Positions 1-48,309 of a stretch of 64,000 nt of DNA are shown here, piece after piece (the stretch's first letter is position 1; each line of letters begins with the position of its first letter). The DNA comes from Macrostomum lignano (Eukaryota): contig NIVC01000416.1 of the NCBI GenBank assembly GCA_002269645.1, positions 186,001-250,000 on the forward strand, read 5' to 3'. The notes beneath the pieces were generated by a model, which was not told the DNA's origin, did no database searches, and saw nothing but the letters and a program-made list of their open reading frames with translations. A program made the translations under genes and the position numbers.

Positions 1-3000
1 CATCCGCGGTAGCGTTGTGCGACTGAGCGCCTTCATCAAGGCGTGATGCAGACGCAGAGCGCGATTTCAACTTTTTCGAAGCCTCAGACTGGTCGAGCTC
101 AGGAGAACGAAATTCGACCTCGGGCTCCTAGGAAGTTAGAGAATAAAAAGACAAGTCAACGTCGGAAGCTTAAATTCAAAACCGCTGCAGTGTATCCGTG
201 TGACCCTCAAACAGACTGAGAGAGCTGCTTCAGTTGTGTCTGTAGGTTAGGTGGACCACCTTCTCTACAGCACTACTAGGCGATAATCTGAGTCGGAATG
301 CCTAGAGACCATTCATTTACACAGTGCAGACATTCTGATCTCATGATGGACCAGCTCGCTTTCTAAGAATCTGTTCTGATTGCATTCCAAGAAACGGAAA
401 CATTCCCGCACTAAACTTTCAAGACAGCTCTGACAGCCAAGGCCCCAAACAGACTGAGAGAGCTGCTTCAGTTGTGTCTGTAGGTTAGGTGGACCACCTT
501 TTAAGAGCTTCTCTACAGCAATTGAGTTGCAGCTAGCTACTTTGAGATCATCAAGCGAAACTCACTTTTCTGGACTCGGTGTCGACGTATTTGCGAGTAG
601 ACCGACGATTTTCACCAGGCGATGCGGCCTTCTTCGAGGCTGGAGTAGCGCCTGCATCCGCGGTAGCGTTGTGCAACTGAGAGCCTTCATCAAGGCGTGA
701 TGCAGACGCAGAGCGCGATTTCAACTTTTTCGAAGCCTCAGACTGGTCGAGCTCAGGAGAACGAAATTCGACCTCGGGCTCCTAGGAAGTTAGAGAATAA
801 AAAGACAAGTCAACGTCGGAAGCTTAAATTCAAAACCGCTGCCGTGTATCCGTGTGACCCTCAAACAGACTGAGAGAGCTGCTTCAGTTGTGTCTGTAGG
901 TTAGGTGGACCACCTTCCAAGAGTCAAAGCCCCAAACAGACTGAGAGAGCTGCTTCAGTTGTGTCTGTAGGTTAGGTGGACCACCTTCCAAGAGTCAAAG
1001 CCCCAAACAGACTGAGAGAGCTGCTTTAGTTGTGTCTGTAGGTTAGGTGGACCACCTTTTAAGAGTCAAAGCCCCAAACAGACTGAGAGAGCTGCTTCAG
1101 TTGTGTCTGTAGGTTAGGTGGACCACCGTATAAAAGTCAAAGCCCCAAACAGACTGAGAAAGCTGCTTCAGTTGTGTCTGTAGGTTAGGTGGACCACCTT
1201 CCAAGAGTCAAAGCCCCAAACAGACTGAGAAAGCTGCTTCAGTTGTGTCTGTAGGTTAGGTGGACCACCTTATAAGAGTCAAAGCCCCAAACAGACTGAG
1301 AGAGCTGCTTCAGTTGTGTCTGTAGGTTAGGTGGACCACCTTTTAAGAGCTTCTCTACAGCAATTGAGTTGCAGCTAGCTACTTTGAGATCATCAAGCGA
1401 AACTCACTTTTCTGGACTCGGTGTCGACGTATTTGCGAGTAGACCGACGATTTTCACCAGGCGATGCGGCCTTCTTCGAGGCTGGAGTAGCGCCTGCATC
1501 CGCGGTAGCGTTGTGCAACTGAGAGCCTTCATCAAGGCGTGATGCAGACGCAGAGCGCGATTTCGACTTTTTCGAAGCGTCAGACTGGTCGAGCTCAGGA
1601 GAATGAAATTCGAACTCAGGCTCCTAGGATGTTAGAGAATAAAAAGACAAGTCAACGTCGGAAGCTTAAATTCAAAACCGCTGCCGTGTATCCGTGTGAC
1701 TAGGGATGTCGATTCCCCGGGGAATATTCTTATCGGGGACCCGGGGAATTTACTGTCATTCCCGGGGACCCCGGGGAAAATTAAAAATAAGTTAAAAACG
1801 GCGAATAACTTTGGCTTAGATCTTAAATGGCATTTTAAACTTTGATTTTAGCTTTAGACTACATGTTCAAGGCGCAAGGGTAAAAACTAAACAATCTCTA
1901 CCTATAAAAATGAAAACTCTGTCTGCGTGTGTGTCTGTGTACAAATTACTTTGCTATGGACTCCCAAGTCCCAAACCGCTCAACCAAATTACGATAACTT
2001 TTGCACCCGCCCTAAATTTACTACGGAGAATGTCTTAGGCTACCTTAAAATTTCCTAAACTCAAGTCTTCCTACCTAAAAGTGCAAAAACTGCTCAAAAT
2101 GCGCGATTTTTTACTAAATCCTCCATAGCGCCGCTCCACTTCTACCGATCCTTTCAACCGTGTAAAATTTCAAGTCTCAAAGTTAATCCTGAAAGGCGCT
2201 GTGCACTTTTAAAATTAACTGTTTTTTCAGCGAGGCAACCACCCCAACCTCCGCCCGCCTGCCTCTCTTTCCCGATCTGGGCAAAGGAGTGTAAATAGGT
2301 TTAAAATGACTAACTTTCGGCTGTCATAAGCTTGCTCCACGTGAAGCGATTGACTTCAAATTTGACGCAATTCTTTATTGACTCATTCTCTATCTAAATG
2401 TAAAGTCTCAACTCTGTATCTCAATCAGGACAGAAACTGTAAGCATGTGAAGTTTGTCTGCTTTTTCTGTTGTTTGTGCCGCTCACTCATTCCACCAGCC
2501 CAGACCCCCAGACGAAGGGTCAGGCGATTGGGCTTAATGTACATAGCGAATGTACAGTGTTTTGGAATAACTTTTTAATAGCCTTCTCTGTACCCCGCGA
2601 GTGGAGAGGCGCAGAGAGGAGAGACAGTTTAGCCAGAGATTCAAAACACTGTCCTCTGTATAGACAAGTCTTCAGGCTCAGTTATAACAGTAGATGGCAA
2701 ATCAAGAGTCAAGACAACGTGGGATGGTTTGTAAAAATAGCGAAAAATTAATGAATAACTGATTACAATGCAATCCTACTAAATTAGTTAGTTACAGCAT
2801 GAAGCTTTTAACATTAAAATTCGCATAAGATCACTTTAAAATTTAAATGGCTCCTAAGAAATGCCTATATCCCTTGGTTGTAGTAGGGATGTCGACCCCG
2901 GGGAGCTTGTGTTTATTTAAAACTGTATTTGACAACGTGGCATCATCAAATCGTGCGTGCACCTTTGTCAGAAGGAGTCCAGACTGTGGTGTGGAGGCGG

Positions 3001-4875
3001 AAAATGCATGCTCAGCAGCTACGCTCGTGGGAGGATAATTAATGAATGAGACCGTTTTTATAATCAAAATTTTTATTTCTAGCAGACATTGTCCTTGTCT
3101 AATAGGGAGCATTTTGTTATTGTATGACACCCCCATGCGTCCGCAGGACGCAGCGCTGTGCCTGCGTCAAATTCCGTCAAGCCGTCAACGCAGACCAACA
3201 CAGTAGTCAGTAAAGCTTCTTTTTCCTGACGGGTTTTTAGGTGAAATTTGCTTGATTGAAGGACTCGTAGTGAAAAAACATTCAAACGTGTGTTGCGTTT
3301 GAAATTTTACATTGAGATAAGCAGTTATGCGGTAAGAAAAGCATAGACAGAGTTTCAATCAGCTCTCTGTGAATTATTTTCTTATTTTAATGGCAAAAAT
3401 TAGGTTAAAAATGCATTTTTCTCCCCGGGGTCCCCGGTTCAATTCCCCGGGGAATATTCCCCGACAAGCTCCCCGGGGCCCCGGGGAGCACTCCCCGGGG
3501 TCGACATCCCTACGTGTGACCCTCAAACAGACTGAGAGAGCTGCTCCAGTTGTGTTTGTAGGTTAGGTGGACCACCTTCTCTACAGCACTACTAGGCGAT
3601 AATCTGAGTCGGAATGCCTAGAGACCATTCATTTACACAGTGCAGACATTCTGATCTCATGGTGGACCAGCTCGCTTTCTAAGAATCTGTTCTGATTGCA
3701 TTCCAAGAAACGGAAACATTCCCGCACTAAACTTTCAAGACAGCTCTGAGAGCCAAGGCCCCAAACAGACTGAGAAAGCTGCTTCAGTTGTGTCTGTAGG
3801 TTAGGTGGACCACCTTCCAAGATTCAAAGCCCCAAACAGACTGAGAGAGCTGCTTCAGTTGTGTCTGTAGGTTAGGTGGACCACCTTATAAAAGTCAAAG
3901 CCCCAAACAGACTGAGAAAGCTGCTTCAGTTGTGTCTGTAGGTTAGGTGGACCACCTTCCAAGATTCAAAGCCCCAAACAGACTGAGAGAGCTGCTTCAG
4001 TTGTGTCTGTAGGTTAGGTGGACCAGCTTCTCTACAGCAATTGAGTTGCAGCTAGCTACTTTGAGATCATCAAGCGAAACTCACTTTTCTGGACTCGGTG
4101 TCGACGGATTTGCCAGTAGACCGACGATTTTCACCAGGCGATGCGGCCTTCTTCGAGGCTGGAGTAGCGCCTGCATCCGCGGTAGCGTTGTGCGACTGAG
4201 CGCCTTCATCAAGGCGTGATGCAGAGCGCGAACGGCTTCGCGATTTCCGCCCTCTTTTTGAGGCACCAGTGCGTTCGATTTGGCGGGAACGAAATTCGAC
4301 CTCAGGCTCCTAGGAAGTTAGAGAATAAAAAGACAAGTCAAAGTCGGAAGCTTAAATTCAAAACCGCTGCAGTGTATCCGTGTGACCCTCAAACAGACTG
4401 AGAGAGCTGCTTCAGTTGTGTTTGTAGGTTAGGTGGACCACCTTCTCTACAGCACTACTAGGCGATAATCTGAGTCGGAATGCCTAGAGGCCATTCATTT
4501 ACACAGTGCAGACATTCTGATCTCATGGTGGACCAGCTCGCTTTCTAAGAATCTGTTCTGATTGCATTCCAAGAAACGTAAGCATTCCTGCACTAAACTT
4601 TCAAGACAGCTCTGTGAGCCAAAGCCCCAAACAGACTGAGAGAGCTGCTTCAGTTGTGTCTGTAGGTTAGATAGGCCTTGCAATTAGCTATTTTGAGATC
4701 ATCAAACGAAACTCACTTTTCTGGACTCGGTGTCGATGGTTTTGCGAGCAGACTGTCGGTTTTCACCAGGCGATGCGGCCTTCTTCGATTTTGCAGTGGC
4801 TTTTTGCGTCGCAGTTTTTTTAGGTTTTACCTTAGGCTTAGGCTTGGCGTCCTTTTTGTTTTTTTTTCGGGTCAT
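1..4875 (-). CDS. Spliced gene for a K/R/S/E-rich low-complexity repeat protein made of duplicated exons (3' end outside window)
   Basis: Exons read on the minus strand: 4875-4717 (ATG in ACAATG context, MTRKKNKKDAKPKPKVKPKK...SRK, 53 codons), 4309-4085 (75 codons), 1623-1408 (72), 781-566 (72), 127-<1. Every internal exon starts after a ...TTTTATTCTCTAAC(T/A)TCCTAG acceptor, every complete exon ends at AGAAAA|GTGAGT, all junctions are phase 0, and there are no stops. Not in the ORF track because it requires splicing. Confidence 0.72.
128..4716. repeat. Intronic 71-bp tandem unit (AAACAGACTGAGAGAGCTGCTTCAGTTGTGTCTGTAGGTTAGGTGGACCACC...) in variable copy number, plus a ~230-bp module, inside exon-intron macro-repeats
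   Basis: Period of 71 bp seen directly (TTAGGTGGAC at 901 and 972). About 7 copies in 782-1407, 4 copies in ~3764-4030, and isolated copies in the other introns. Confidence 0.9.
1701..3512. mobile_element. Non-autonomous hAT-superfamily DNA transposon (composite)
   Basis: TIRs TAGGGATGTCGA (1701-1712) and TCGACATCCCTA (3501-3512); perfect 8-bp TSD CGTGTGAC at 1693-1700 and 3513-3520; subterminal CCCCGGGG repeats; no transposase ORF. Confidence 0.9.
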
Positions 4876-5162
4876 TGTATCTTGCTTGGCACAATAAATT
4901 TATCTATAGATGAAACTTAGAGTATGGAAAATAATGTTAGACCTAATAAGTGTGAATAGAATCAGTTCTAATTTATAAAACTGTCTGTGTGTGGTCTAAC
5001 TACGCCATGGTTTACGGGGACCACCCGCTTAGACATTATATATCCCTCTCTCTACAGTCTTACCTTCAGAACCCTTGCGGGTTTCCTATTGGCTGAGGTC
5101 GGTCCCATCGTTGGGGTTGATCTTTCCTCCTAAGTGTTAACCAGCCAATTATAGAAAGGGAG

Positions 5163-7005: not shown

Positions 7006-7206
7006 TTAGGATTGAAGGGTTAGGATTGAAGGGTTAGGGTTGAAGGGTTAGTGTTGAAGGGTTAGGGTTGAAGGGTTAGGGTTGAAGGGTTAAGGTTGTA
7101 GAGTTGGGTTGAAAGGTTAGGGTTGAAGGGTTAGGGTTGAAGGGTTAAGGTTGTAGAGTTGGGTTGAAAGGTTAGGGTTGTAGGGTTAGGGTTGAAGGGT
7201 TAGGAT
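7006..7206 (+). repeat. 14-bp TTAGGGTTGAAGGG tandem repeat (telomere-like, G-rich)
   Basis: Direct reading; most units contain TTAGGG. Confidence 0.85.
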
Positions 7207-7458: not shown

Positions 7459-10400
7459 CTTAGACGTCGGCAGTATGATGTAAACGATGCAGATTAGCGG
7501 CAGCAGCGGTGCGGCGATGAGGGAGAGGCCGACTTTCTTGGCGAGCGTCCAGGACTGCAGGAAAGCGGTCTCGGAGCCGTACCAGATGCTGGTGAGGTAC
7601 TGCTGGCAGTTGGCGTGCGCCACGAACTGTGTGGCGAAGGAAGGAGGTTGGTTAGGCCAGTAGCAAACGTGTTAGAACAGAGATTGGCACGTCCGGTATG
7701 TCTTAATTTGCCTAAAGAAAGCTTCAAGCCTCAGATAGATCCTCAGCTTCCACAGCTTAATCATGTCTGGTGGGTTAGCATAATCTTACGGCTATATTAG
7801 GATAAATTGTAAAGTGTACAGCCAAGATAGACAAGAACTTTTGGAAGCTGCTCTGCAAATGTTCTGCCACGTCAACCTGGAGCTGAAATCCACGATAATG
7901 GAGTCCTCGTATTCTAATCTTGAAAGTACATTTTAAGGAAAAATTAGGCCTTCCAATTTTTTCGAGGAAAAGAAGCAGCATCCCATGCTTCTACTTGCCC
8001 CAGAGCATGACTTTTGTTGATTGAACTCAAGTTAGTAAGTAGCTAATCAAGTGGGTCAACTCAAATTTAGTGCAGCTTCTCTACAGTATATGCCTGCTAG
8101 TTCCCGGATGAAAAATTTAAATTGCTAACTCAAGTAATGAGGCAAGCTAAATTGAAGAATCTAATACCCTATGGGTTTTCAAGTAATGGAGTAGTCGTAG
8201 GCTATTAAATAAAAATGATTGCCCTATCGTGTCCGTTGCATTGACAACTGCGGTTGAAGGCCGCTGCAGGACATTCGGTTTTCTTAGAAATGGGCTGGAG
8301 GCCGGTAGGAAACGCGTGTTTGTTGTATCGCCAGTGCATTGGGGTATTGGGGTATGCTCTGGAGAACGGGAAGGGGAAGGGAAGGTTGGGTCGAAGGTGA
8401 AGGTGGAGGTGAAGGGGAACGTGAACGTGAATGTGAAGGTGTAGGGGAAGGTGATGTGAATTCACACACTGAACAAGTTAATAAAGTGTCACCTTCTTCT
8501 CCTGGTACCGAATCGCCATCCTAAGCCGACCCAGAGGATCCCGAACGTTCGCTCCGCAGACTTCAGTCTCCAAATTGTCGGAGATGACGGCTTCAACCTC
8601 CTGGGTGCCGCGGCAAAGGTCCATCATTTCGCAGGCAAAGTTCATGCACTGCTCGACTAAGGTCAGGTATTCGGTCTGGAAAAATACACGTCGAAGGAAT
8701 GCATAATTGTTGCGGAAACTTTTATCATCATCCCCTAATTTGATCGTTTAAAGTGCATTTTTTGTTTATAAACAAACGAACTTTAGGGAAATCGTTGAAA
8801 CAGATTCTATTAAAATTGCACTATAAAGCGTCGTTCTTATAATCCTTTGAAACTAATGTTGGCGTGAAAATAGAGGAAAAGAGTCGGAGGATAATTAGGC
8901 AGGAACATGAGAAGAAGTCAGAGAGCAAAGCGGCTGAGTAGTCAAGGCTTGGATTCTAAGGTTGGTAGCTTTTAAAAGTGTGCACACACTAGAAAAGAGC
9001 AGCAGCCAGAGGGCCTGGGACGACACGAGAGAAAGCCAAGGGTCAGTGTAATTTGCTTAGGCCACTCGGGCGTGCGGACCGAGCGAGGCGGCTAGCGGAA
9101 CAAGGAAAAGACGGAGGGACCGGCAGTTGTCAAGTATAGGGATTTAGCCCGGGTGGCTAAATTAGGTTACCACCGGCTGGGGCAGGGGAGACACTTGGGG
9201 AGGGGGGAGTCGCTCGGATGAAAAGCTCCTGACTGACGGAACCGAGAAGATCAAAGCTCAAAGTCCAGTCGCCGCCTGTTTGTAACTTATTATTATATAT
9301 CTACTAGGCCTAGCTTAATACTACTTCACTACGATCGCTTTTTTCAATAATAAACAATCTGGTTTGCACCCAGCCACCATGGAATATTCTCGAAACCAGA
9401 CGATGCACTTTAGTTTGTAATAAGGCGCTGAGGGCTTTTTGGACAGTACAGAAAGATATCAAAGAGGCAGTCAACCTGTCAGCCTAATTTGCAGGGCTGC
9501 GGACTCTCTGGCGCAATGCCTTCGGCGAAATTCTGTACATTCCACTGACTCCTGACATTCAGTACGGCCTATTTTGCGTGGGTACGCACTCATACACATG
9601 CTCTTTCTAATCGTCATCATCTCACGACAACCCACGACCAAATGAATTTGGTCGCTCACGGAATCGAACCTACTCACTTTGAATTCCTTCTCCACCTCAG
9701 CTAGCTTCATCATCTCCTGACGCAGCTCAAACGTGGTCATGATGGGGTCCGGGCTGCTCAGCGCCATGTAAGCCGGACTAGCGAGAGCTCTGTAGGCATT
9801 CAGCCGAGACCGGGACCGTTTCAGCGAGTCGTAGTTCTGCTTAATCTGGCAGTCCTCGCACAGGCAGGTGATCACGTGCGGTTTCTCGATAGTGTGGTTG
9901 CGCGCGAGGAACATCTGGATGATCTCGTGGTTGTTGTAGTGGGCGGACAGGATCAGCGGAGTGATGTCCGGCGAGAACTGCGATTTCTCTTCCGTGCTGT
10001 GTGGGAATATTGGAAAAATAATGCAGGGAAGTTTAAAATTCGTCCATAAATGATTGACTGCTTATTAAAGGATAAAATGGTTATACATTTACTGGTGTAG
10101 CAATTCTTCCCATTTCGCTGACTCCTGAGCATGCGACTACGCAGGCACACCACGCTCACGTGTCACGTGGATTAAGAATTAAGCATTGAAAGGGATTCGC
10201 TGTGAAAGATTTGGCATAAAATTTTATTAAGCACAGATTAAACTAGCTAATAAATAAATTTTAGAAGTTAAGCATTCGTACTTTAAAACTTCACTACCGT
10301 ATTCTCTTAAACTAATTTGTCCTTATGTATTGGAAAGAGAATTAGTTCGAGACTCTCCAAAATGCTTAGTCTCAACCGCTTCGTCTGTCTGTCTCCAATC

Positions 10401-41543: not shown

Positions 41544-44500
41544 ACGCGAGAACGAAACGCCTGCTGCTGGCTTCCTCGACGACGAGAGTCAGCGGCGGTG
41601 GGGGAGGCGGCGTTGGCAGCGGCGTCAGTAACGAGGACGACGATGAGGACGATGCCACGCTGTCGCCCGCGTCGTCCTCGGCCGGTGCGGCGCTACCAAT
41701 CGACGGGATCGACTTGGGAGACGTCGTTGACGATGACGACGCAGCCACAAAGGTCGGCGGTCGCGTCGGTGGCGGCGTCGGTCGCGAGTTCGAGCTGCTG
41801 CAAGCGATGGAGACAGACCGAACAAGCGTCAGCTCGAGCGACGATTGGGGCGACTGCGTGAGCTGACTGTTTATTATCTAGGCTGTGTCATATCTAGACT
41901 CTTGCATTAACATCGCAAACCGCGTTGCATTCCGGAAAACAAAATCATTTCCAGGAATACGACATTCTGGCCGCTCAACGCGTCAACAGCCTATTTGAGC
42001 AGATCGATTGTCTCCTATACAGAGTCGACACGGCCGTCGTTCCGCCAAAGAAGACTCAGGAGGAGTGCTCGGAATGGGCAGCCGCCTTCCCTCACCTGCT
42101 GGTGCGCGGAAGCCGACTAACAACTGAGGAGTTCGAGGGGGGCGACGCCGGCGTGAGGTTCTTCCCGCCGCCCAGGGAGGCCACCCCGAGGGCGTCGGCT
42201 GCGGCGGCACCGGCTGCTTCGGCTGGTTCCACTGATGCCGCAACCGCAATTCCGCCTTCCCTTGGGATTGATAGGTATGTAAAGTGGATTGCTTTGTTGG
42301 TAACTTACTACAGTTGTGTCCGCAGATGATGCTGGAATTCTTGCTCAGTTGTGTCTATAGATGATGCTGGAATTCTTGCTCAGGTGTGTCTATAGATGAT
42401 GCTGGAATTCTTGCTCAGTTGTGTTTATAGATGATGCTGGAATTCTTGCTCAGCTGTGTTTATAGATGATGCTGGAATTCTTGCTCAGCTGTGTTTATAG
42501 ATGATGCTGGAATTCTTGCTCAGTTGTGTTTATAGATGATGCTGGAATTCTTGCTCAGCTGTGTTTATAGATGATGCTGGAATTCTTGCTCAGCTGTGTT
42601 TATAGATGATGCTGGAATTCTTGCTCAGCTGTGTTTATAGATGATGCTGGAATTCTTGCTCAGCTGTGTTTATAGATGATGCTGGAATTCTTGCTCAGCT
42701 GTGTTTATAGATGATGCTGGAATTCTTGCTCAGCTGTGTTTATAGATGATGCTGGAATTCTTGCTCAGCTGTGTCCACAGATGGTGCTGGAATTCTTGCT
42801 CAGCTGTGTCCACAGATGGTGCTGGAATTCTTGCTCAGTTGTGTCCACAGATGGTGCTGGAATTCTTGCTCAGTTGTGTCCGCAGATGGTGCTGGAATTC
42901 TTGCTCAGTTGTGTCCGCAGATGGTGCTGGAATTCTTGCTCAGTTGTGTCCACAGATGGTGCTGGAATTCTTGCTCAGTTGTGTCCACAGATGGTGCTGG
43001 AATTCTTGCTCAGTTGTGTCCACAGATGGTGCTGGAATTCTTGCTCAGTTGTGTCCACAGATGGTGCTGGAATTCTTCCATTTGTGGCCACATTCTAATG
43101 ACCAAATCTGGAATGATACTTATAGAGCTTTTCTAGAACCACGGGAACTTTCAGGGATTACCGCATTCAGTAGCGCACTCTGTGCACTTTCATTTTTAGG
43201 TAATCTGATTAACCTTACAAGGCCACTTGGCAGAGTTTATGACTACTATTTCATCAAGGGTCAAATCCCAATGGACTTAGAGGAGATGTTCATCTAGCTT
43301 TCTCTAATAAATTTTTCATCACTCAGCTGAGATATTTTTAGTATAGTAGAAGAAACAACAAACTATAGAAGGTGGTCAGAAGTTGCTCAGTTGAGAGAGC
43401 CCTGCACTTTGACTTGACATAGCTGTAGTGCCATGCAGTCAGACACGGTCGGACAACACTCCAGCGCATTCTTTGCGTCGCCATGGAAACAAGCAAGTGC
43501 TGAGCCAAGCCTGTACTTGCATTTATTTTAGGACTACACAGTAAACATGTTGAGTGCTCGCGTTCGAGTGAAGCGAGTGGTCATCTCCTCCATCGGGCCG
43601 TACACTTATCGTCTAACAAGAGCTACCAGTCAATGACTTTTAGTTAACTTATTAAGTGAAGCTTTAGTTAGTTAAATTCCGTTTGTTTAACTAACTGGAA
43701 TTCGAATACGCGCCAAAAGGGACATTGTTATGAAACAGTCATTTTAAAAGCCACGAGTAAATACCGGTAATAAGCGACTAACGTTAAGGAACATTTTTGA
43801 TACTCAGTGCAAAAGTCGTTATCATCCTACTGTCAATAATAAATGAAGTATCTTAAACTTGCAACTTCTATTGCAGCCTCTGTCTGGTGGGTCAATCAGC
43901 CAAAATCCTGCAGCCGCCCACCGATGCCAGCAGCTCCCAGATTGACGATAACAACGACGACGGCGCCGAAGACGACCCGCACATCGCTCTCGAGGAGATC
44001 CTAGCCGCTGACGGGCTGGTAGAAGAGGCCATCGCTCTCGACGATCGACACCTGCAGCCGGCCGTTGATCGATCATCCGACGCTATTCCAGCTGCAGCCG
44101 TAGTGGCCACGGCTGCCGACGAGGCCGCCTCTGCTGAGCGGCCCTCGCGTCGGAGCGGCCTCCCTCCGATGACGCCAAGTCTGGCGGTCCGCGACTCTTT
44201 GCAGGGCGCGGCATTCGACGCCCTGTGGCTGCGCGTGGCGGTCGCCTTTCGGCCGCTGTGCTGCGAGCGACTTCGCCGAAGTCGCCGACGACGCCAGCTC
44301 GAAGAACACGACGACGACGACGACGAAGACGTAGTGTTGGTAGACGATGATGACGAAGACGAGGATGTCGAGCTGGATGTGGGCGGGTCTACGCGAGCTC
44401 CAGTGGTTACGGCCGCGGCAAAATCCGCCGTCATTTCTGCGCCGGGCCAGCGTCCACCTCGGCAGGCGCCATCCTCGGCTGCTTCGTCCCGGGCGTCCTC

Positions 44501-45407
44501 TTCAACTGGTGGTGGAGGTGGCCGTCGACGACGTCAACATCTTGGCCCGTTGTCAACTGCCGGACTATCGGAGCTACCGCTGACCTCTGCCATCGCTGCT
44601 ACGGGCATCGGCGGCGGGGTTGGCGGCGAGGAGCTGTCGCACTTTCTCAACATCAAGTCAAAGACGTTGCAGCTGCGCACTGGACGGCGACCGAATTCGC
44701 CGCCTCTGCGTGATATTCCCGAGTCACCAGTGCCTCAGCTGTCACCACCAGCATTGACAGCTGCTCTTCTCCCGCCGTCTGCCGAGCATGCCCACCCACC
44801 TCTGACTGCTACGACGCAGTCCTCGCGTCGGATGTCCTCAGCCGCGTCGTCGCGTCCCCGATCGCGTTTGTCGACCATCCCGGGCGATTCGCCGTCCCCA
44901 GCGCCTGGAGCAACTTCAACATCCGCCATGATCTCTGCGGCTGCGCGCCGTTCGCGGACATCGTCTGTTGAAGACGCGCTCGGACTTCGCGTTGTGCCGT
45001 TGCGATCGGCACAGATACCGAATTCTGCTCAGCAAATTCCGCAGCCAGCGCTGACTCGTTCCGGCACGCTGCCTCCGTTGTTCGACCATCGGCGTCGGAG
45101 CGCGCAACGGCCTGGCAGCGGCGGCGTTCGTCAGGGAGCGCATTCCTCTTTGGACTTGCTGCCGTCGACCACATTCAGGGCATCATCTGGGGCGTCAGCA
45201 ACGTCGTCTAGTATGGGTCTGCGCAAGTCGGCCACTGGTGCCTTGACAACGACGCAGAAGCATGCCGCCGCGGCAGTGCACAGCGGTGGCCTAGACGTTC
45301 ACGGAAGAGCGCTGACTACCGCAGGGCACGAACTAATTGAAGCAGAACCGTCTGTTGGCCTTAGACGAGGTGCAAGTCCGCTGTGTAAGTTCATGCGTTT
45401 TTTGTAA
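41544..45407 (+). CDS. FAM149: FAM149-family protein (DUF3719)
   Basis: Exons 41544-41857 (..TSVSSSDDWGDC|), 41955-42274 (EYDILAAQRVNSLFEQIDCLLY...QEECSEWAAAFPHLLVRG) and 43877->45384/45407 (..EEILAADGLVEEAIALD.. followed by a long disordered tail), with consistent splice phases. The motifs match my recollection of DUF3719. The 5' and 3' ends are uncertain. Confidence 0.75.
42312..43077. repeat. 35-bp EcoRI-containing minisatellite (~22 copies) in a FAM149 intron
   Basis: Unit AGATG(A/G)TGCTGGAATTCTTGCTCAG(C/T)TGTGT(TTAT/CCAC); two variant blocks. Confidence 0.92.
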
Positions 45408-47140: not shown

Positions 47141-48309
47141 AACAACAACAACAACAAAGTACGCTGTCATGTGGAAAAAAGCAGCGTCACAGGGCACGCT
47201 TCAGAGCCTGGGCGCGAACAAAGGCCGCACCGCCGGCAGAGTCCGGGGCGCCAGCGTCGGCCAGCAGGCAGTCGACGAAACGCCGAGTTTGGGCCTGGCC
47301 GCGCCGGTAGGGTGCCTGCAGCGTTAGCAGCAGCACCTCCTGCACCGGCTGCGGGCAGTAGAACTCGGCGCGGATGATGTGGCCTGCCAGCTGGAGTCGC
47401 CGAAGTCGCAGCAGTTCACTTGGACGGGCCAGGCCGGCGCGGCGATAGAGTGCCGCGTTAGTGATCCGCTCGTCGCTGATCTTAAAGGCGGCGCGCAGCA
47501 GGCCAGCATGCGCCGCGTTGACTTGCTGTTCGAGCGAATCCGTCAGCGTCCAGGTCTCGGCGTTGTACAACTGGACGGTCTCGACCACCGCCTGGAATAG
47601 CGCCGCCCTCTGGCGGTCAGCCAGGGCCTCGGACTGCAGGACCGCCCTCACAGAGCAAAAGGCAGCCCAAGCGAGCCCGCGGCGACGCAGCAGATCTTCG
47701 TGGACGTCAGGTACCAGACCGCCGAGGTAGACGAACTGCTGACAGCGCGGAAGCTTCGTTACCTGCCCGCCAGCGGCTCGGCAGAAAATCGCGGCCTCGA
47801 TGTTGCCCGGCACGCAAAGCACAACGGTCTTCTTCGTGTTGACCACCAGGCCGACGCTCGCTGCAGCGCTAACCAGCTTGTCCAGCTGGCGCTGGGCGCC
47901 CTCTACGGTCGAGGACAGCAGCGCGAGGTCATCGGCGTAGCCAAGCACGCTGAGCGTTTCTCCGGTGGACGTCGACCCACGCGTCGCCGCATTAGGAAGC
48001 CGTCTTCGTCGGTAGGAAGAGCAGTTCGTATAGCACCCAGTCAAGCACCAGGACGAACAGGAACGGCGCTAGAGTGTCCCCCTGGAGCACCACGGAGGAT
48101 GTCTCGAAGGAGTCCGACAGGCCGTCCGGCGTCATCACAGCTGCTCTCGTAGCACAGTACAACGCCATTATGGCGGAGATCAGCTGTTCTGGTACATGAT
48201 ACGCATGGAGCACATGTGGGAGCGCAGCCCTCGCAACGAGTCGAATGCCTTCATGAAGTCAATGAAGACAACAATCAGGTCCAACTGGCGCGTGCGCGCC
48301 GCCTCGATG
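47141..48309 (-). mobile_element. 5'-truncated, frameshifted RTE-like non-LTR retrotransposon (RT C-terminal part)
   Basis: RT motifs FIDFMKAFDS, LQGDTLAPFLF, LGYADDLALL, VNTKKT, FVYLGG and LYNAETWTLT across several frames; (GTT)n 3' tail; imperfect TSD TAGTATACT(TA/AG)TAC at 47127-47140 and 48310-48323. Confidence 0.88.

What the first reader, a model, noticed from the sequence alone, without database searches (positions are those of the whole stretch)
1..4875. Hidden gene growing by tandem duplication of a whole exon+intron module
Seen: five minus-strand exons with identical splice contexts, all phase 0 and stop-free despite substitutions and a 9-nt indel (75 versus 72 codons). They give MTRKKNKKDAKPKPKVKPKKTATQKATAKSKKAASPGENRQSARKTIDTESRK followed by repeats such as EPEVEFRSPELDQSEASKKLKSRSASASRLDEGSQLHNATADAGATPASKKAASPGENRRSTRKYVDTESRK. 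The ORF track misses it and it looks like a satellite. Frame is preserved in all copies while the introns vary in copy number and carry a transposon, which suggests selection. Inference: a lineage-specific disordered protein with an H1-tail/SNBP-like basic N-terminus, alternating acidic and basic blocks, and repeated SP phosphosites. Symmetric exons would permit free exon skipping and length polymorphism.
Basis: partly seen in the sequence, partly recalled or inferred. Interest (0 to 1): 0.75.

Follow-up and report, generated by a model that had tools for sequence, protein, structure and literature searches.

The report
Tandemly duplicated exon–intron module, flatworm gene
The window's first 4.9 kb holds the start of a probable flatworm (Macrostomum lignano) gene whose 72–75-codon exon has been copied at least four times together with its intron; this is a real but ordinary case of tandem exon duplication, part of it is already in public gene models, and selection on the copies is not shown.

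Summary
On the minus strand there is an ATG exon (4875–4717) followed by exons 4309–4085 (225 nt), 1623–1408 and 781–566 (216 nt each) and 127–1 (cut by the window edge). All are phase 0, open only in frame 0 across all five, and bounded by YAG|GAGCC…AAAAG|GTGAGT. Introns carry a variable 71-bp minisatellite, and intron 2 carries a 1.8-kb TIR element with an 8-bp target-site duplication.

It is not wholly hidden. Three Macrostomum lignano UniProt models (A0A1I8FWK5, A0A1I8HXN8 and a third) splice an E1-like exon to an exon up to 100% identical to exon 2, downstream of a DBF4-type BRCT and zinc-finger gene. No DBF4 domain lies in the window, so this is a paralogous tail-only locus with its own ATG.

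The selection argument is weak. The five exons are copies of one module, so their shared splice sites are not independent evidence. The young copies (97–99% identical) show 6 nonsynonymous to 1 synonymous change. Exons are not better conserved than introns. The only sign of constraint is the older exon 2 versus exons 3–5 contrast: ω≈0.55 in frame 0 against 1.2–1.9 in the other frames, p≈0.07.

The H1/SNBP-like reading rests on composition only. I conclude a probable gene for a disordered nuclear repeat protein that grows by unequal crossing-over. Expression is untested.

The parts
4717..4875 (-). Exon 1 (E1). The ATG is at 4875. It encodes MTRKKNKKDAKPKPKVKPKKTATQKATAKSKKAASPGENRQSARKTIDTESRK. 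The last 72 nt are the first, partial unit of the repeat.
   Evidence: Searches give the open frame. One search shows the in-frame TAA 8 codons upstream. One search shows the last 72 nt are 90% identical to the 3' end of E2–E4. One search shows homology to residues ~258–305 of the M. lignano model A0A1I8HXN8.
4310..4716 (-). Intron 1 (407 nt, GT…AG). It holds partial 71-bp units and the ~280-nt 'U' segment.
4085..4309 (-). Exon 2 (E2, 'A-type', 225 nt, 75 codons): EPEVEFRSRQIERTGASKRGRKSRSRSRSAS…TESRK.
   Evidence: It is 100% identical in protein to the last 75 residues of A0A1I8FWK5 and 97% identical to A0A1I8HXN8.
1624..4084 (-). Intron 2 (2461 nt). In order it holds the 5' piece, about four 71-bp units (3754–4030), the U segment (3513–3786), the inserted element (1701–3512) and the 3' piece.
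1701..3512 (.). Non-autonomous TIR transposon, hAT-like by its 8-bp target-site duplication (GTCACACG). The TIRs read TAGGGATGTCGA(C/T)(C/T)CCCGGGG. There is an extra internal TIR at 2884, so a 629-bp sub-element at 2884–3512 has perfect 23-nt arms. It is present in this module only, so it inserted after the module was duplicated.
   Evidence: searches (inverted repeats; three TIR matches against 0 expected) and flanks read. One search found no transposase domain.
1408..1623 (-). Exon 3 (E3, 'B-type', 216 nt, 72 codons).
782..1407 (-). Intron 3 (626 nt). It holds about seven 71-bp units (862–1349) and no U segment.
566..781 (-). Exon 4 (E4, B-type, 216 nt). It has 5 differences from E3.
128..565 (-). 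Intron 4 (438 nt). It holds one 71-bp unit, the U segment and a partial unit.
1..127 (-). Exon 5 (E5), cut by the window edge. Its 5' part is B-type but its middle carries the E2-type markers (GAQSH), so it is a mosaic. The gene continues beyond the window and no stop codon is seen.
5036..5092 (-). Possible core promoter. A CCAAT box lies at 5092–5088 and TATATAA at 5042–5036, about 165 nt upstream of the ATG.
   Evidence: Read directly from the sequence. This is a motif match only and was not tested.

Best explanation
Window 1–4875 (minus strand) is the 5' part of a probable protein-coding gene of Macrostomum lignano or a very close relative. It encodes an intrinsically disordered, basic, Ser/Ala/Lys/Arg-rich protein: a lysine-rich, NLS-like N-terminus followed by at least four 72–75-residue repeats, each encoded by one phase-0 exon.

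The locus is a paralogue of the C-terminal 'tail' that public M. lignano gene models attach to a DBF4-type (BRCT plus zf-DBF) gene. Here the DBF4 part is absent and the tail has its own ATG.

The array grew by unequal crossing-over or replication slippage of a unit of about 0.65–0.85 kb. The unit runs from the last 72 nt of one exon, through the whole intron, to the first ~144 nt of the next exon. The array is kept nearly uniform by ongoing conversion or unequal exchange. The exception is an older ~100-nt patch that distinguishes the first repeat (A-type, RS-rich) from the later ones (B-type, acidic). An intronic 71-bp minisatellite and a later transposon insertion explain the different intron lengths.

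Shown: the anatomy, the homology to annotated exons, the module duplication, the mosaicism and the disorder prediction. Inferred: transcription, splicing and translation at this locus, nuclear localisation, and any function. The function I think most likely is a phosphorylation-regulated nuclear or chromatin-associated scaffold, by analogy with the tails of metazoan DBF4 and with Nopp140/treacle-like repeat proteins.
For: Anatomy:
- The ATG has an in-frame stop upstream.
- The four introns have GTGAGT donors, which match the M. lignano donor consensus GT[G/A]AG (PMC8629364).
- The acceptors have a pyrimidine tract, a CTAAC branch-like motif and TAG|G.
- All exon lengths are divisible by 3, and only frame 0 is open in all five exons.

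External support:
- A0A1I8HXN8 and A0A1I8FWK5 (M. lignano, 380 aa) contain …AASLGENRQSARKYVDTESKK|EPEVEF…TESRK. That is the same junction and an exon 97–100% identical to E2, read in frame 0.
- Their N-terminal parts are BRCT plus zf-DBF.
- tblastn finds no such domain in the window.

Frame-specific substitution pattern, E2 versus E3/E4:
- ω is 0.55 in frame 0, 1.7–1.85 in frame 1 and 1.15 in frame 2.
- 14 of 31 differences fall at third codon positions.
- The indel is 9 nt.

Module duplication and homogenisation:
- Intron pieces are 98–100% identical between modules.
- The unit boundary lies inside E1.
- Mosaic markers link I1–E2 with I4–E5.
- The transposon, with its target-site duplication, is present in one module only.

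Disorder:
- 8.5% hydrophobic residues, pI 10.3.
- AlphaFold2 mean pLDDT 50 with no secondary structure.
- No Pfam domain above threshold.

Genome context fits M. lignano. About 15% of that genome is simple or tandem repeats, 180 Mb lies in ≥95% identical duplicated blocks, and the average intron is 1.1–1.4 kb (PMC5730564).
Against: - No transcript evidence could be consulted.
- The only matching proteins are three predicted M. lignano models held in UniRef. One of them (A0A1I8J…, P0124) reads the same exons in frame +1, so the frame is not experimentally fixed.
- All three models stop at the end of the E2-like exon without a stop codon.
- No other protein among 5.8 billion clusters or 1.84 billion representatives contains the repeat.
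- Among the young copies the changes are 6 nonsynonymous to 1 synonymous, and exons are no better conserved than introns.
- The ω≈0.55 signal has p≈0.07 and depends on the alignment of a short, divergent patch.
- The 3' end and stop codon lie outside the window.
- The locus lies directly downstream, on the same strand, of a TRPC gene whose transmembrane exons are missing from the window. It could therefore sit in an intron or in rearranged, decaying DNA.
Confidence: 0.6

Rival explanations
1. This is a non-functional partial duplicate. A segmental duplication copied only the 3' tail of the DBF4-linked gene to a new place. The ATG and the TATA/CCAAT motifs are fortuitous. The module array expands and homogenises neutrally, like any minisatellite-bearing tandem repeat, and the open frame persists only because the copies are young.
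For: - The DBF4 domains are absent from the window.
- E1 upstream of 'ATQKATA' has no counterpart in the DBF4-linked models.
- Substitutions among E3, E4 and E5 look neutral, at 6 nonsynonymous to 1 synonymous.
- Exons are not more conserved than introns.
- An open frame survives 31 random substitutions 30% of the time.
- The M. lignano genome is rich in recent duplications and tandem repeats (PMC5730564).
- The neighbouring TRPC gene also looks incomplete.
Against: - The A-type/B-type patch has diverged to dS≈0.8, yet it keeps frame 0 open, has an in-frame 9-nt indel and shows an excess of third-position changes in frame 0 only.
- The E2 protein sequence is 100% conserved with a paralogous locus.
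- All eight splice sites are intact, and the ATG has a clean upstream stop.
Confidence: 0.27
2. The repeat exons are not a separate gene but part of a larger transcription unit. One version is that they are in-frame cassette exons in a long intron of the upstream TRPC gene. The other is that the locus is the downstream cistron of a polycistronic pre-mRNA that is resolved by SL trans-splicing.
For: - TRPC exons run on the same strand from 11853 to a phase-0 donor AAG|GTGAGG at 7459/7458.
- Its ion-transport exons are nowhere in the window, so the next TRPC exon may lie beyond position 1.
- E2–E5 have phase-0 acceptors.
- About 7% of M. lignano transcripts are polycistronic, and the SL ends in ATG (PMC5730564; PMC8629364).
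- The public models fuse the tail to an upstream DBF4 gene, as would happen with an operon-like pair.
Against: - E1 cannot be an in-frame internal exon. There is a TAA 8 codons upstream of the ATG, and the only nearby acceptor-like AG gives an early stop in phase 0 (reading).
- No [T/C]TNCAG trans-acceptor motif lies just upstream of the ATG.
- A disordered basic repeat inserted after TM1 of a TRPC channel is implausible.
Confidence: 0.08
3. This is a purely non-coding satellite whose unit happens to contain an open frame and splice-like motifs.
For: - The region is tandemly repeated and lies in a window full of minisatellites.
- Frame +1 is also open in two copies.
Against: - Independent public gene models splice exactly at these boundaries.
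- The array is absent from the remaining 59 kb of the window.
- The frame-0-specific substitution pattern argues against it.
- A unique ATG exon is joined to the array.
Confidence: 0.05

Closest known systems
C-terminal tail of Macrostomum lignano 'DBF4-type domain-containing protein' models (UniProt A0A1I8HXN8, A0A1I8FWK5; related model P0124, named 'NTP_transf_2 domain-containing protein')
   Same: These models have the same exon–exon junction (…DTES[KR]K|EPEVEF…). Their exon is 97–100% identical to E2. Their preceding exon is E1-like and shares ATQKATA and AAS[LP]GENRQSARK.
   Different: The models carry BRCT and zf-DBF domains upstream, and the window has none. E1 here begins with its own ATG and a Lys-rich segment. 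The models end after one repeat, whereas the window shows at least four. One model uses frame +1.
Tandem exon duplication, or exon-plus-intron module copy-number arrays (from my own knowledge: LPA kringle IV-2 repeats, TCOF1/treacle repeat exons, nebulin and titin PEVK exon blocks, NBPF Olduvai exon doublets; survey by Letunic, Copley & Bork 2002)
   Same: In both, adjacent homologous exons of the same phase have lengths divisible by three and were duplicated together with their introns. Copy number is prone to change by unequal crossing-over. The encoded repeats are mostly disordered or modular.
   Different: The module here is small (0.65–0.85 kb), very young and homogenised. It contains its own intronic 71-bp minisatellite. 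Population copy-number variation and alternative splicing were not tested.
Nopp140/treacle-type nuclear phosphoproteins, and disordered tails of metazoan DBF4/ASK (my own knowledge)
   Same: These proteins also have alternating acidic and basic Ser-rich blocks, many S/T-P, R-R-x-S/T and CK2-like sites, predicted disorder and basic NLS-like stretches.
   Different: There is no LisH or SRP40 C-terminal domain and no detectable sequence homology. The resemblance is in composition and pattern only.
Histone H1 C-terminal tails and sperm nuclear basic proteins
   Same: The N-terminal 33 residues are rich in K, P and A, with net charge +14 and pI 11.1.
   Different: There is no linker-histone winged-helix domain and no protamine-like arginine tracts. 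The bulk of the protein is only mildly basic (unit net charge +2) and includes acidic blocks.

Membership tests
DBF4/ASK family (Cdc7 activators) | Motif N (BRCT-like domain) | tested here: not met
   The BRCT match is found in P0001 residues 12–63. tblastn of P0001 against the whole window gives no hit to residues 1–280.
DBF4/ASK family (Cdc7 activators) | Motif C (zf-DBF CCHH zinc finger, PF07535) | tested here: not met
   zf-DBF is present in P0001 at 195–240 (E = 6.5e-16). It is absent from the spliced window protein and from the window DNA.
DBF4/ASK family (Cdc7 activators) | Homology to the post-zinc-finger tail of the M. lignano DBF4-type models | tested here: met
   BLASTP of E1+E2 against P0001 gives 76% identity over 129 residues, E = 6e-49. 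E2 is 100% identical to the P0003 C-terminus. This shows paralogy with the tail only, not membership of the DBF4 family.
Tandem exon (exon-plus-intron module) duplication | Adjacent exons are homologous to each other and the flanking introns are homologous too | tested here: met
   Exons are 84–98% identical. Intron 5' and 3' pieces and the U segment are 97–100% identical.
Tandem exon (exon-plus-intron module) duplication | Same intron phase and exon length divisible by 3, so each copy is frame-neutral | tested here: met
   Exon lengths are 225, 216 and 216 nt, all phase 0–0.
Tandem exon (exon-plus-intron module) duplication | The copies are included in mature mRNA | not testable with these tools
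   No transcript data were available. Only predicted protein models were found.
Linker histone H1 / SNBP | Winged-helix globular domain (PF00538), or protamine-like arginine-rich or H1-derived architecture | tested here: not met
   The Pfam scan of the spliced protein gives only two sub-threshold chance matches. The AlphaFold2 model has no folded domain. Only the Lys/Pro/Ala-rich composition of residues 1–33 is similar.
SR proteins | RRM domain plus an RS domain | tested here: not met
   There is an RS-like stretch (KSRSRSRSAS) in E2 only, and no RRM.
hAT-superfamily transposon (the insertion in intron 2) | 8-bp target-site duplication and short terminal inverted repeats | tested here: met
   The duplication GTCACACG flanks 1701–3512 (read). 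The TIRs are TAGGGATGTCGA…, with three matches against 0 expected.
hAT-superfamily transposon (the insertion in intron 2) | Transposase with a hAT C-terminal dimerisation domain | tested here: not met
   The internal ORFs 2843–3136 and 3079–3285 give no Pfam match. The element is at best a non-autonomous derivative, and its superfamily assignment rests on the target-site duplication length alone.

The most novel reading that the evidence does not exclude
A new gene was born when the disordered C-terminal tail of a DBF4-type (Cdc7-activator) gene was duplicated away from its catalytic-partner domains. The copy acquired its own promoter, ATG and lysine-rich nuclear-targeting exon. It is now lengthening through exon-plus-intron module duplication. 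Selection keeps a distinct RS-rich first repeat, which is 100% conserved between paralogous loci, while the later acidic repeats turn over. Such a tail-only protein could act as a decoy or scaffold for the kinases that act on the DBF4 tail. Because the M. lignano spliced leader ends in ATG and every repeat exon has a phase-0 acceptor, individual repeats could even be expressed from internal trans-splice sites.
Probability: 0.15. Interest if true: 0.5.

Novelty: new member of a known kind. Interest (0 to 1): 0.3.

Why it matters
If the locus is expressed, it is a clean, very young example of how a disordered repeat protein lengthens one exon-plus-intron module at a time. It would also show how a fragment of an essential cell-cycle regulator's tail can become an independent gene in a recently polyploid, repeat-rich flatworm genome.

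There is a practical point for annotation as well. In this genome, arrays that look like satellites can contain real exons. The existing M. lignano models of this family are truncated at the first repeat and disagree on the reading frame. Beyond this, the finding does not change current understanding, because tandem exon duplication is well known.

Tried and rejected
1. I looked for DBF4 domains in the window by tblastn with P0001 at E≤10 and found none. The locus is therefore not the DBF4 gene itself.
2. I tried to fetch the DNA of the DBF4-linked loci, but P0001 is not on record in the contig collection. Exon boundaries and array length at the paralogous loci could not be compared.
3. An exact-pattern scan of metagenome contigs for the conserved exon core gave 0 matches.
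4. Rfam found no RNA family anywhere in the window, so the 71-bp unit and the U segment are not known RNAs.
5. The mussel protein CAC5405269.1 (Mytilus coruscus, 64-residue repeats) scored E = 1.8e-14 in the representative search. The score comes from summing five repeats. One unit against one unit scores 54 raw, against 21.7±4.0 for shuffles. That is far too weak for a library of 1.8 billion proteins, so I treat it as unproven rather than as a homologue.
6. I attempted a species check through the neighbouring TRPC exon. The best hit is only 79% identical and comes from an unidentified ENA contig. The species assignment therefore rests on the 97–100% match of the 75-residue E2 exon to M. lignano models.
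7. A Pfam scan of ORFs inside the transposon found no hAT domain.
8. A literature search for M. lignano plus Dbf4 found nothing.
9. I considered and rejected E1 as an internal exon of an upstream gene, because of the in-frame stop and the lack of a usable acceptor.

Full report
**1. What is in the sequence**

| Exon | Window coordinates | Length | Notes |
|---|---|---|---|
| E1 | 4875–4717 | 159 nt | Starts with ATG; an in-frame TAA lies eight codons upstream |
| E2 | 4309–4085 | 225 nt, 75 codons | A-type |
| E3 | 1623–1408 | 216 nt, 72 codons | B-type |
| E4 | 781–566 | 216 nt, 72 codons | B-type |
| E5 | 127–1 | cut by the window edge | Mosaic of B-type and A-type markers |

- Each intron begins GTGAGTTTCG. 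Each ends with a pyrimidine tract, CTAAC and TAG, followed by GAGCC.
- Frame 0 is the only frame without stops in all five exons. Frame +1 is open in E2 and E3 but not in E1, E4 or E5.

**2. The unit of repetition**

- BLASTN of the parts against the whole window shows that the array is confined to 1–4875.
- The last 72 nt of E1 are 90% identical to the last 72 nt of E2–E4.
- The repeated unit is therefore not 'exon plus intron' in register. It runs from the last third of one exon, through the intron, to the first two thirds of the next exon. That is what unequal crossing-over produces.
- The introns share a 60-nt 5' piece and an ~80-nt 3' piece. Between these lie a variable number of 71-bp units: about 7 in intron 3, about 4 in intron 2, about 1 in intron 4 and only partial units in intron 1. 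An ~280-nt segment 'U' is present in introns 1, 2 and 4 but not in intron 3.
- Intron 2 also carries an insertion at 1701–3512. Its terminal inverted repeats read TAGGGATGTCGA…CCCCGGGG and it has a third, internal TIR at 2884. It is flanked by the 8-bp duplication GTCACACG (flanks read).
- No other module has this insertion, so it arrived after the duplication. Its ORFs have no Pfam domain. It is a non-autonomous element, hAT-like only by the length of its target-site duplication.

**3. Is there evidence of selection?**

The numbers do not bear this out for the young copies.

- E3, E4 and E5 differ by 2–7 substitutions (97.7–98.4% identity over the compared length). The non-minisatellite intron pieces of the same modules differ by 0/60 and 1/84.
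- The differences among the B-type exons are 6 nonsynonymous to 1 synonymous, giving ω≥1.3.
- With so few changes, stops or frameshifts are not expected, so their absence says nothing.
- E2 differs from E3/E4 at 31 of 216 sites plus a 9-nt indel. Nearly all of this lies in the first ~100 nt. The introns on both sides of these exons are 97–100% identical. The exon is therefore far more divergent than its introns.
- This pattern indicates a homogenised array that retains an old patch (dS≈0.8). The patch distinguishes an RS-rich 'A-type' first repeat (SRQIERTGASKRGRKSRSRSRSAS) from acidic 'B-type' repeats (SPELDQSEASKKLKSRSASAS).
- Within that old patch there is a modest coding signature.

| Measure (E2 versus E3/E4) | Frame 0 | Frame +1 | Frame +2 |
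|---|---|---|---|
| ω | 0.55 | 1.7–1.85 | 1.15 |

- In addition, 14 of the 31 differences fall at third codon positions, and the indel is a multiple of three. The binomial p for the synonymous excess is about 0.07.
- Thirty-one random substitutions leave frame 0 open in 30% of simulations.
- E5 combines a B-type 5' part with the E2-type markers GCGCTCAGTCG. Intron 4 shares the 'ACACTGCAG' variant with intron 1. This mosaicism is expected from gene conversion or unequal exchange.
- Overall there is weak, frame-specific evidence that frame 0 has been a coding frame. There is no evidence of purifying selection on the recent copies.

**4. External evidence**

- A search of 5.8 billion protein clusters with the spliced product found one cluster. 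Its members are UniProt A0A1I8HXN8 (P0001) and A0A1I8FWK5 (P0003), both from Macrostomum lignano and both named 'DBF4-type domain-containing protein'.
- Both are 380-residue fragments with a BRCT-like region and a zf-DBF zinc finger (PF07535, E = 6.5e-16).
- Downstream of the zinc finger they read …ATQKATAPMTHHDTKKPDSKALPNIFQQNDGDRRQAASLGENRQSARKYVDTESKK, followed by a 75-residue block. That block is 97% (P0001) or 100% (P0003) identical to E2.
- A third model (P0124) joins the DBF4 N-terminal part to the same two exons at the same junction but reads them in frame +1. Its last 74 residues equal my +1 translation of E2.
- All three models end at the last codon of the E2-like exon without a stop. 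This is what a contig break or a collapsed tandem array would cause.
- An exhaustive HMMER scan of 1.84 billion representative proteins added only a Mytilus coruscus repeat protein. Its score is inflated by repetition, and I regard it as unproven.
- The window contains no BRCT or zf-DBF sequence.
- Three conclusions follow. The window almost certainly comes from M. lignano or a sibling species. The repeat exon is not unknown to public annotation. The window locus is a paralogue of only the tail of the DBF4-linked unit, with a different first exon that has its own ATG and a Lys-rich segment.
- M. lignano is a recent polyploid with 180 Mb of ≥95% identical duplicated blocks and ~15% tandem or simple repeats. 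About 7% of its assembled transcripts are polycistronic precursors (PMC5730564). The DBF4–tail fusion in the older models could therefore be a true fusion or two neighbouring cistrons merged by the predictor. I could not decide this, because the DNA of those loci is not retrievable here.

**5. The protein**

- The 272 residues visible before the truncated E5 have pI 10.3 and 8.5% hydrophobic residues. They contain 15% Ser, 14% Ala, 13% Lys and 11% Arg.
- Residues 1–33 carry a net charge of +14.
- Each repeat alternates an acidic block (EPEVEFRSPELD, −4) with basic blocks. Each repeat contains three S/T-P sites, one RRST site and CK2-like sites.
- AlphaFold2 on the single sequence gives a mean pLDDT of 50 and essentially no secondary structure. 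Pfam gives nothing above threshold.
- The 'H1/SNBP-like' label is thus a description of the N-terminal composition, not a family assignment. A bipartite NLS-like nuclear targeting segment is an equally good reading.
- By analogy with the disordered, phosphorylated tails of metazoan DBF4 and with Nopp140/treacle-type proteins (my own knowledge), the most likely role is a phospho-regulated nuclear scaffold. This is inference.

**6. Surroundings**

- Upstream of the ATG there is a CCAAT box (5092–5088) and TATATAA (5042–5036), spaced as in a classical core promoter (read). This is suggestive only.
- Further upstream on the same strand lie the 5' exons of a TRPC channel gene. The ankyrin exon is at 11853–11245. 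The TRP_2 exon is at about 9914–9672 (PF08344, E = 1.3e-27). Further exons lie near 8660–8490 and 7671–7459. The last ends in a phase-0 donor AAG|GTGAGG.
- No ion-transport exons exist anywhere in the window. Either the repeat gene sits in a long TRPC intron or this TRPC copy is truncated.
- E1 cannot be an in-frame internal exon. Splicing from TRPC into E2–E5 would be in frame, so I keep that as a low-probability rival.

**7. Verdict**

- The 'exon-plus-intron module duplication' reading is right.
- 'Hidden' is only partly right, because the family is annotated, though truncated and with inconsistent frames.
- 'Selection' is not demonstrated.
- 'H1/SNBP-like' is unsupported beyond composition.
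- The most likely explanation (about 0.6) is a real, lineage-specific gene for a disordered nuclear repeat protein. It would be derived from the DBF4-linked tail and be growing by unequal crossing-over.
- The main rival (about 0.27) is a decaying partial duplicate.
- This is a new member of a well-known kind of gene architecture and of modest interest. RNA-seq mapping would settle it quickly.

Noticed in passing
window 7459–11853 (minus strand): These are the 5' exons of a TRPC-type channel gene (ankyrin repeats, TRP_2 domain, 'AHANCQQYL' and the TM1 region), ending at a phase-0 donor at 7459/7458. The ion-transport exons are absent from the whole window, so the gene either has a very long intron enclosing the repeat locus or is a truncated copy.
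   Followed up: partly
public proteins P0001/P0003/P0124 (M. lignano UniProt models): Three models share the same N-terminal truncation and all end exactly at the end of the E2-like exon with no stop. One of them reads the repeat exons in frame +1 and is named 'NTP_transf_2 domain-containing'. The public annotation of this family is truncated and disagrees on the frame, probably because of assembly breaks at the tandem array.
   Followed up: partly
window 12600–34000: About 20 kb consists almost entirely of back-to-back minisatellites with periods of 11, 17, 20/39, 12, 29, 10, 18, 34, 14/21 and 21 bp. Purine/pyrimidine strand asymmetry is extreme (GC skew up to ±0.7) and switches sign between blocks. 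All the long 'ORFs' here are repeat artefacts.
   Followed up: no
window 7006–7204: An interstitial telomere-like array has the unit TTAGGGTTGAAGGG (14.4 copies) and lies inside the apparent TRPC intron region.
   Followed up: no
window 43887–45407 (+) and 47187–48044 (−): A 506-codon GC-rich open frame (58% GC locally) encodes a low-complexity Ala/Ser/Pro/Arg-rich product with no Pfam match. Nearby is a LINE-type reverse-transcriptase fragment (RVT_1, E = 6e-6, below the gathering score).
   Followed up: partly
Mytilus coruscus CAC5405269.1 (P0002): This mussel protein is built of 64-residue tandem repeats. It aligns unit-for-unit with the flatworm repeat (ADAGxxPxS…PGxx…TRx…TE; 28% identity; unit-level z≈8 against shuffles). 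The library E-value of 1.8e-14 is inflated by repetition, so homology is unproven.
   Followed up: partly
window 862–1349, 3754–4030 and 42311–43077: The 71-bp intronic minisatellite contains a near-palindrome (GGTGGTCCACC). It shares an 11-nt core (CAGTTGTGTCT, followed by a 1-nt mismatch and TAG) with an unrelated 35-bp minisatellite 38 kb away. This may be chance or a shared slippage-prone motif.
   Followed up: no
literature (PMC8629364), in relation to the acceptors at 4310, 1624, 782 and 128: The M. lignano spliced leader ends in …TTGCATG. Because every repeat exon starts in phase 0 directly after its acceptor, an SL trans-spliced onto any of them would supply an in-frame ATG (M-E-P-E-V-E-F…). 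This is purely a sequence-logic observation.
   Followed up: no
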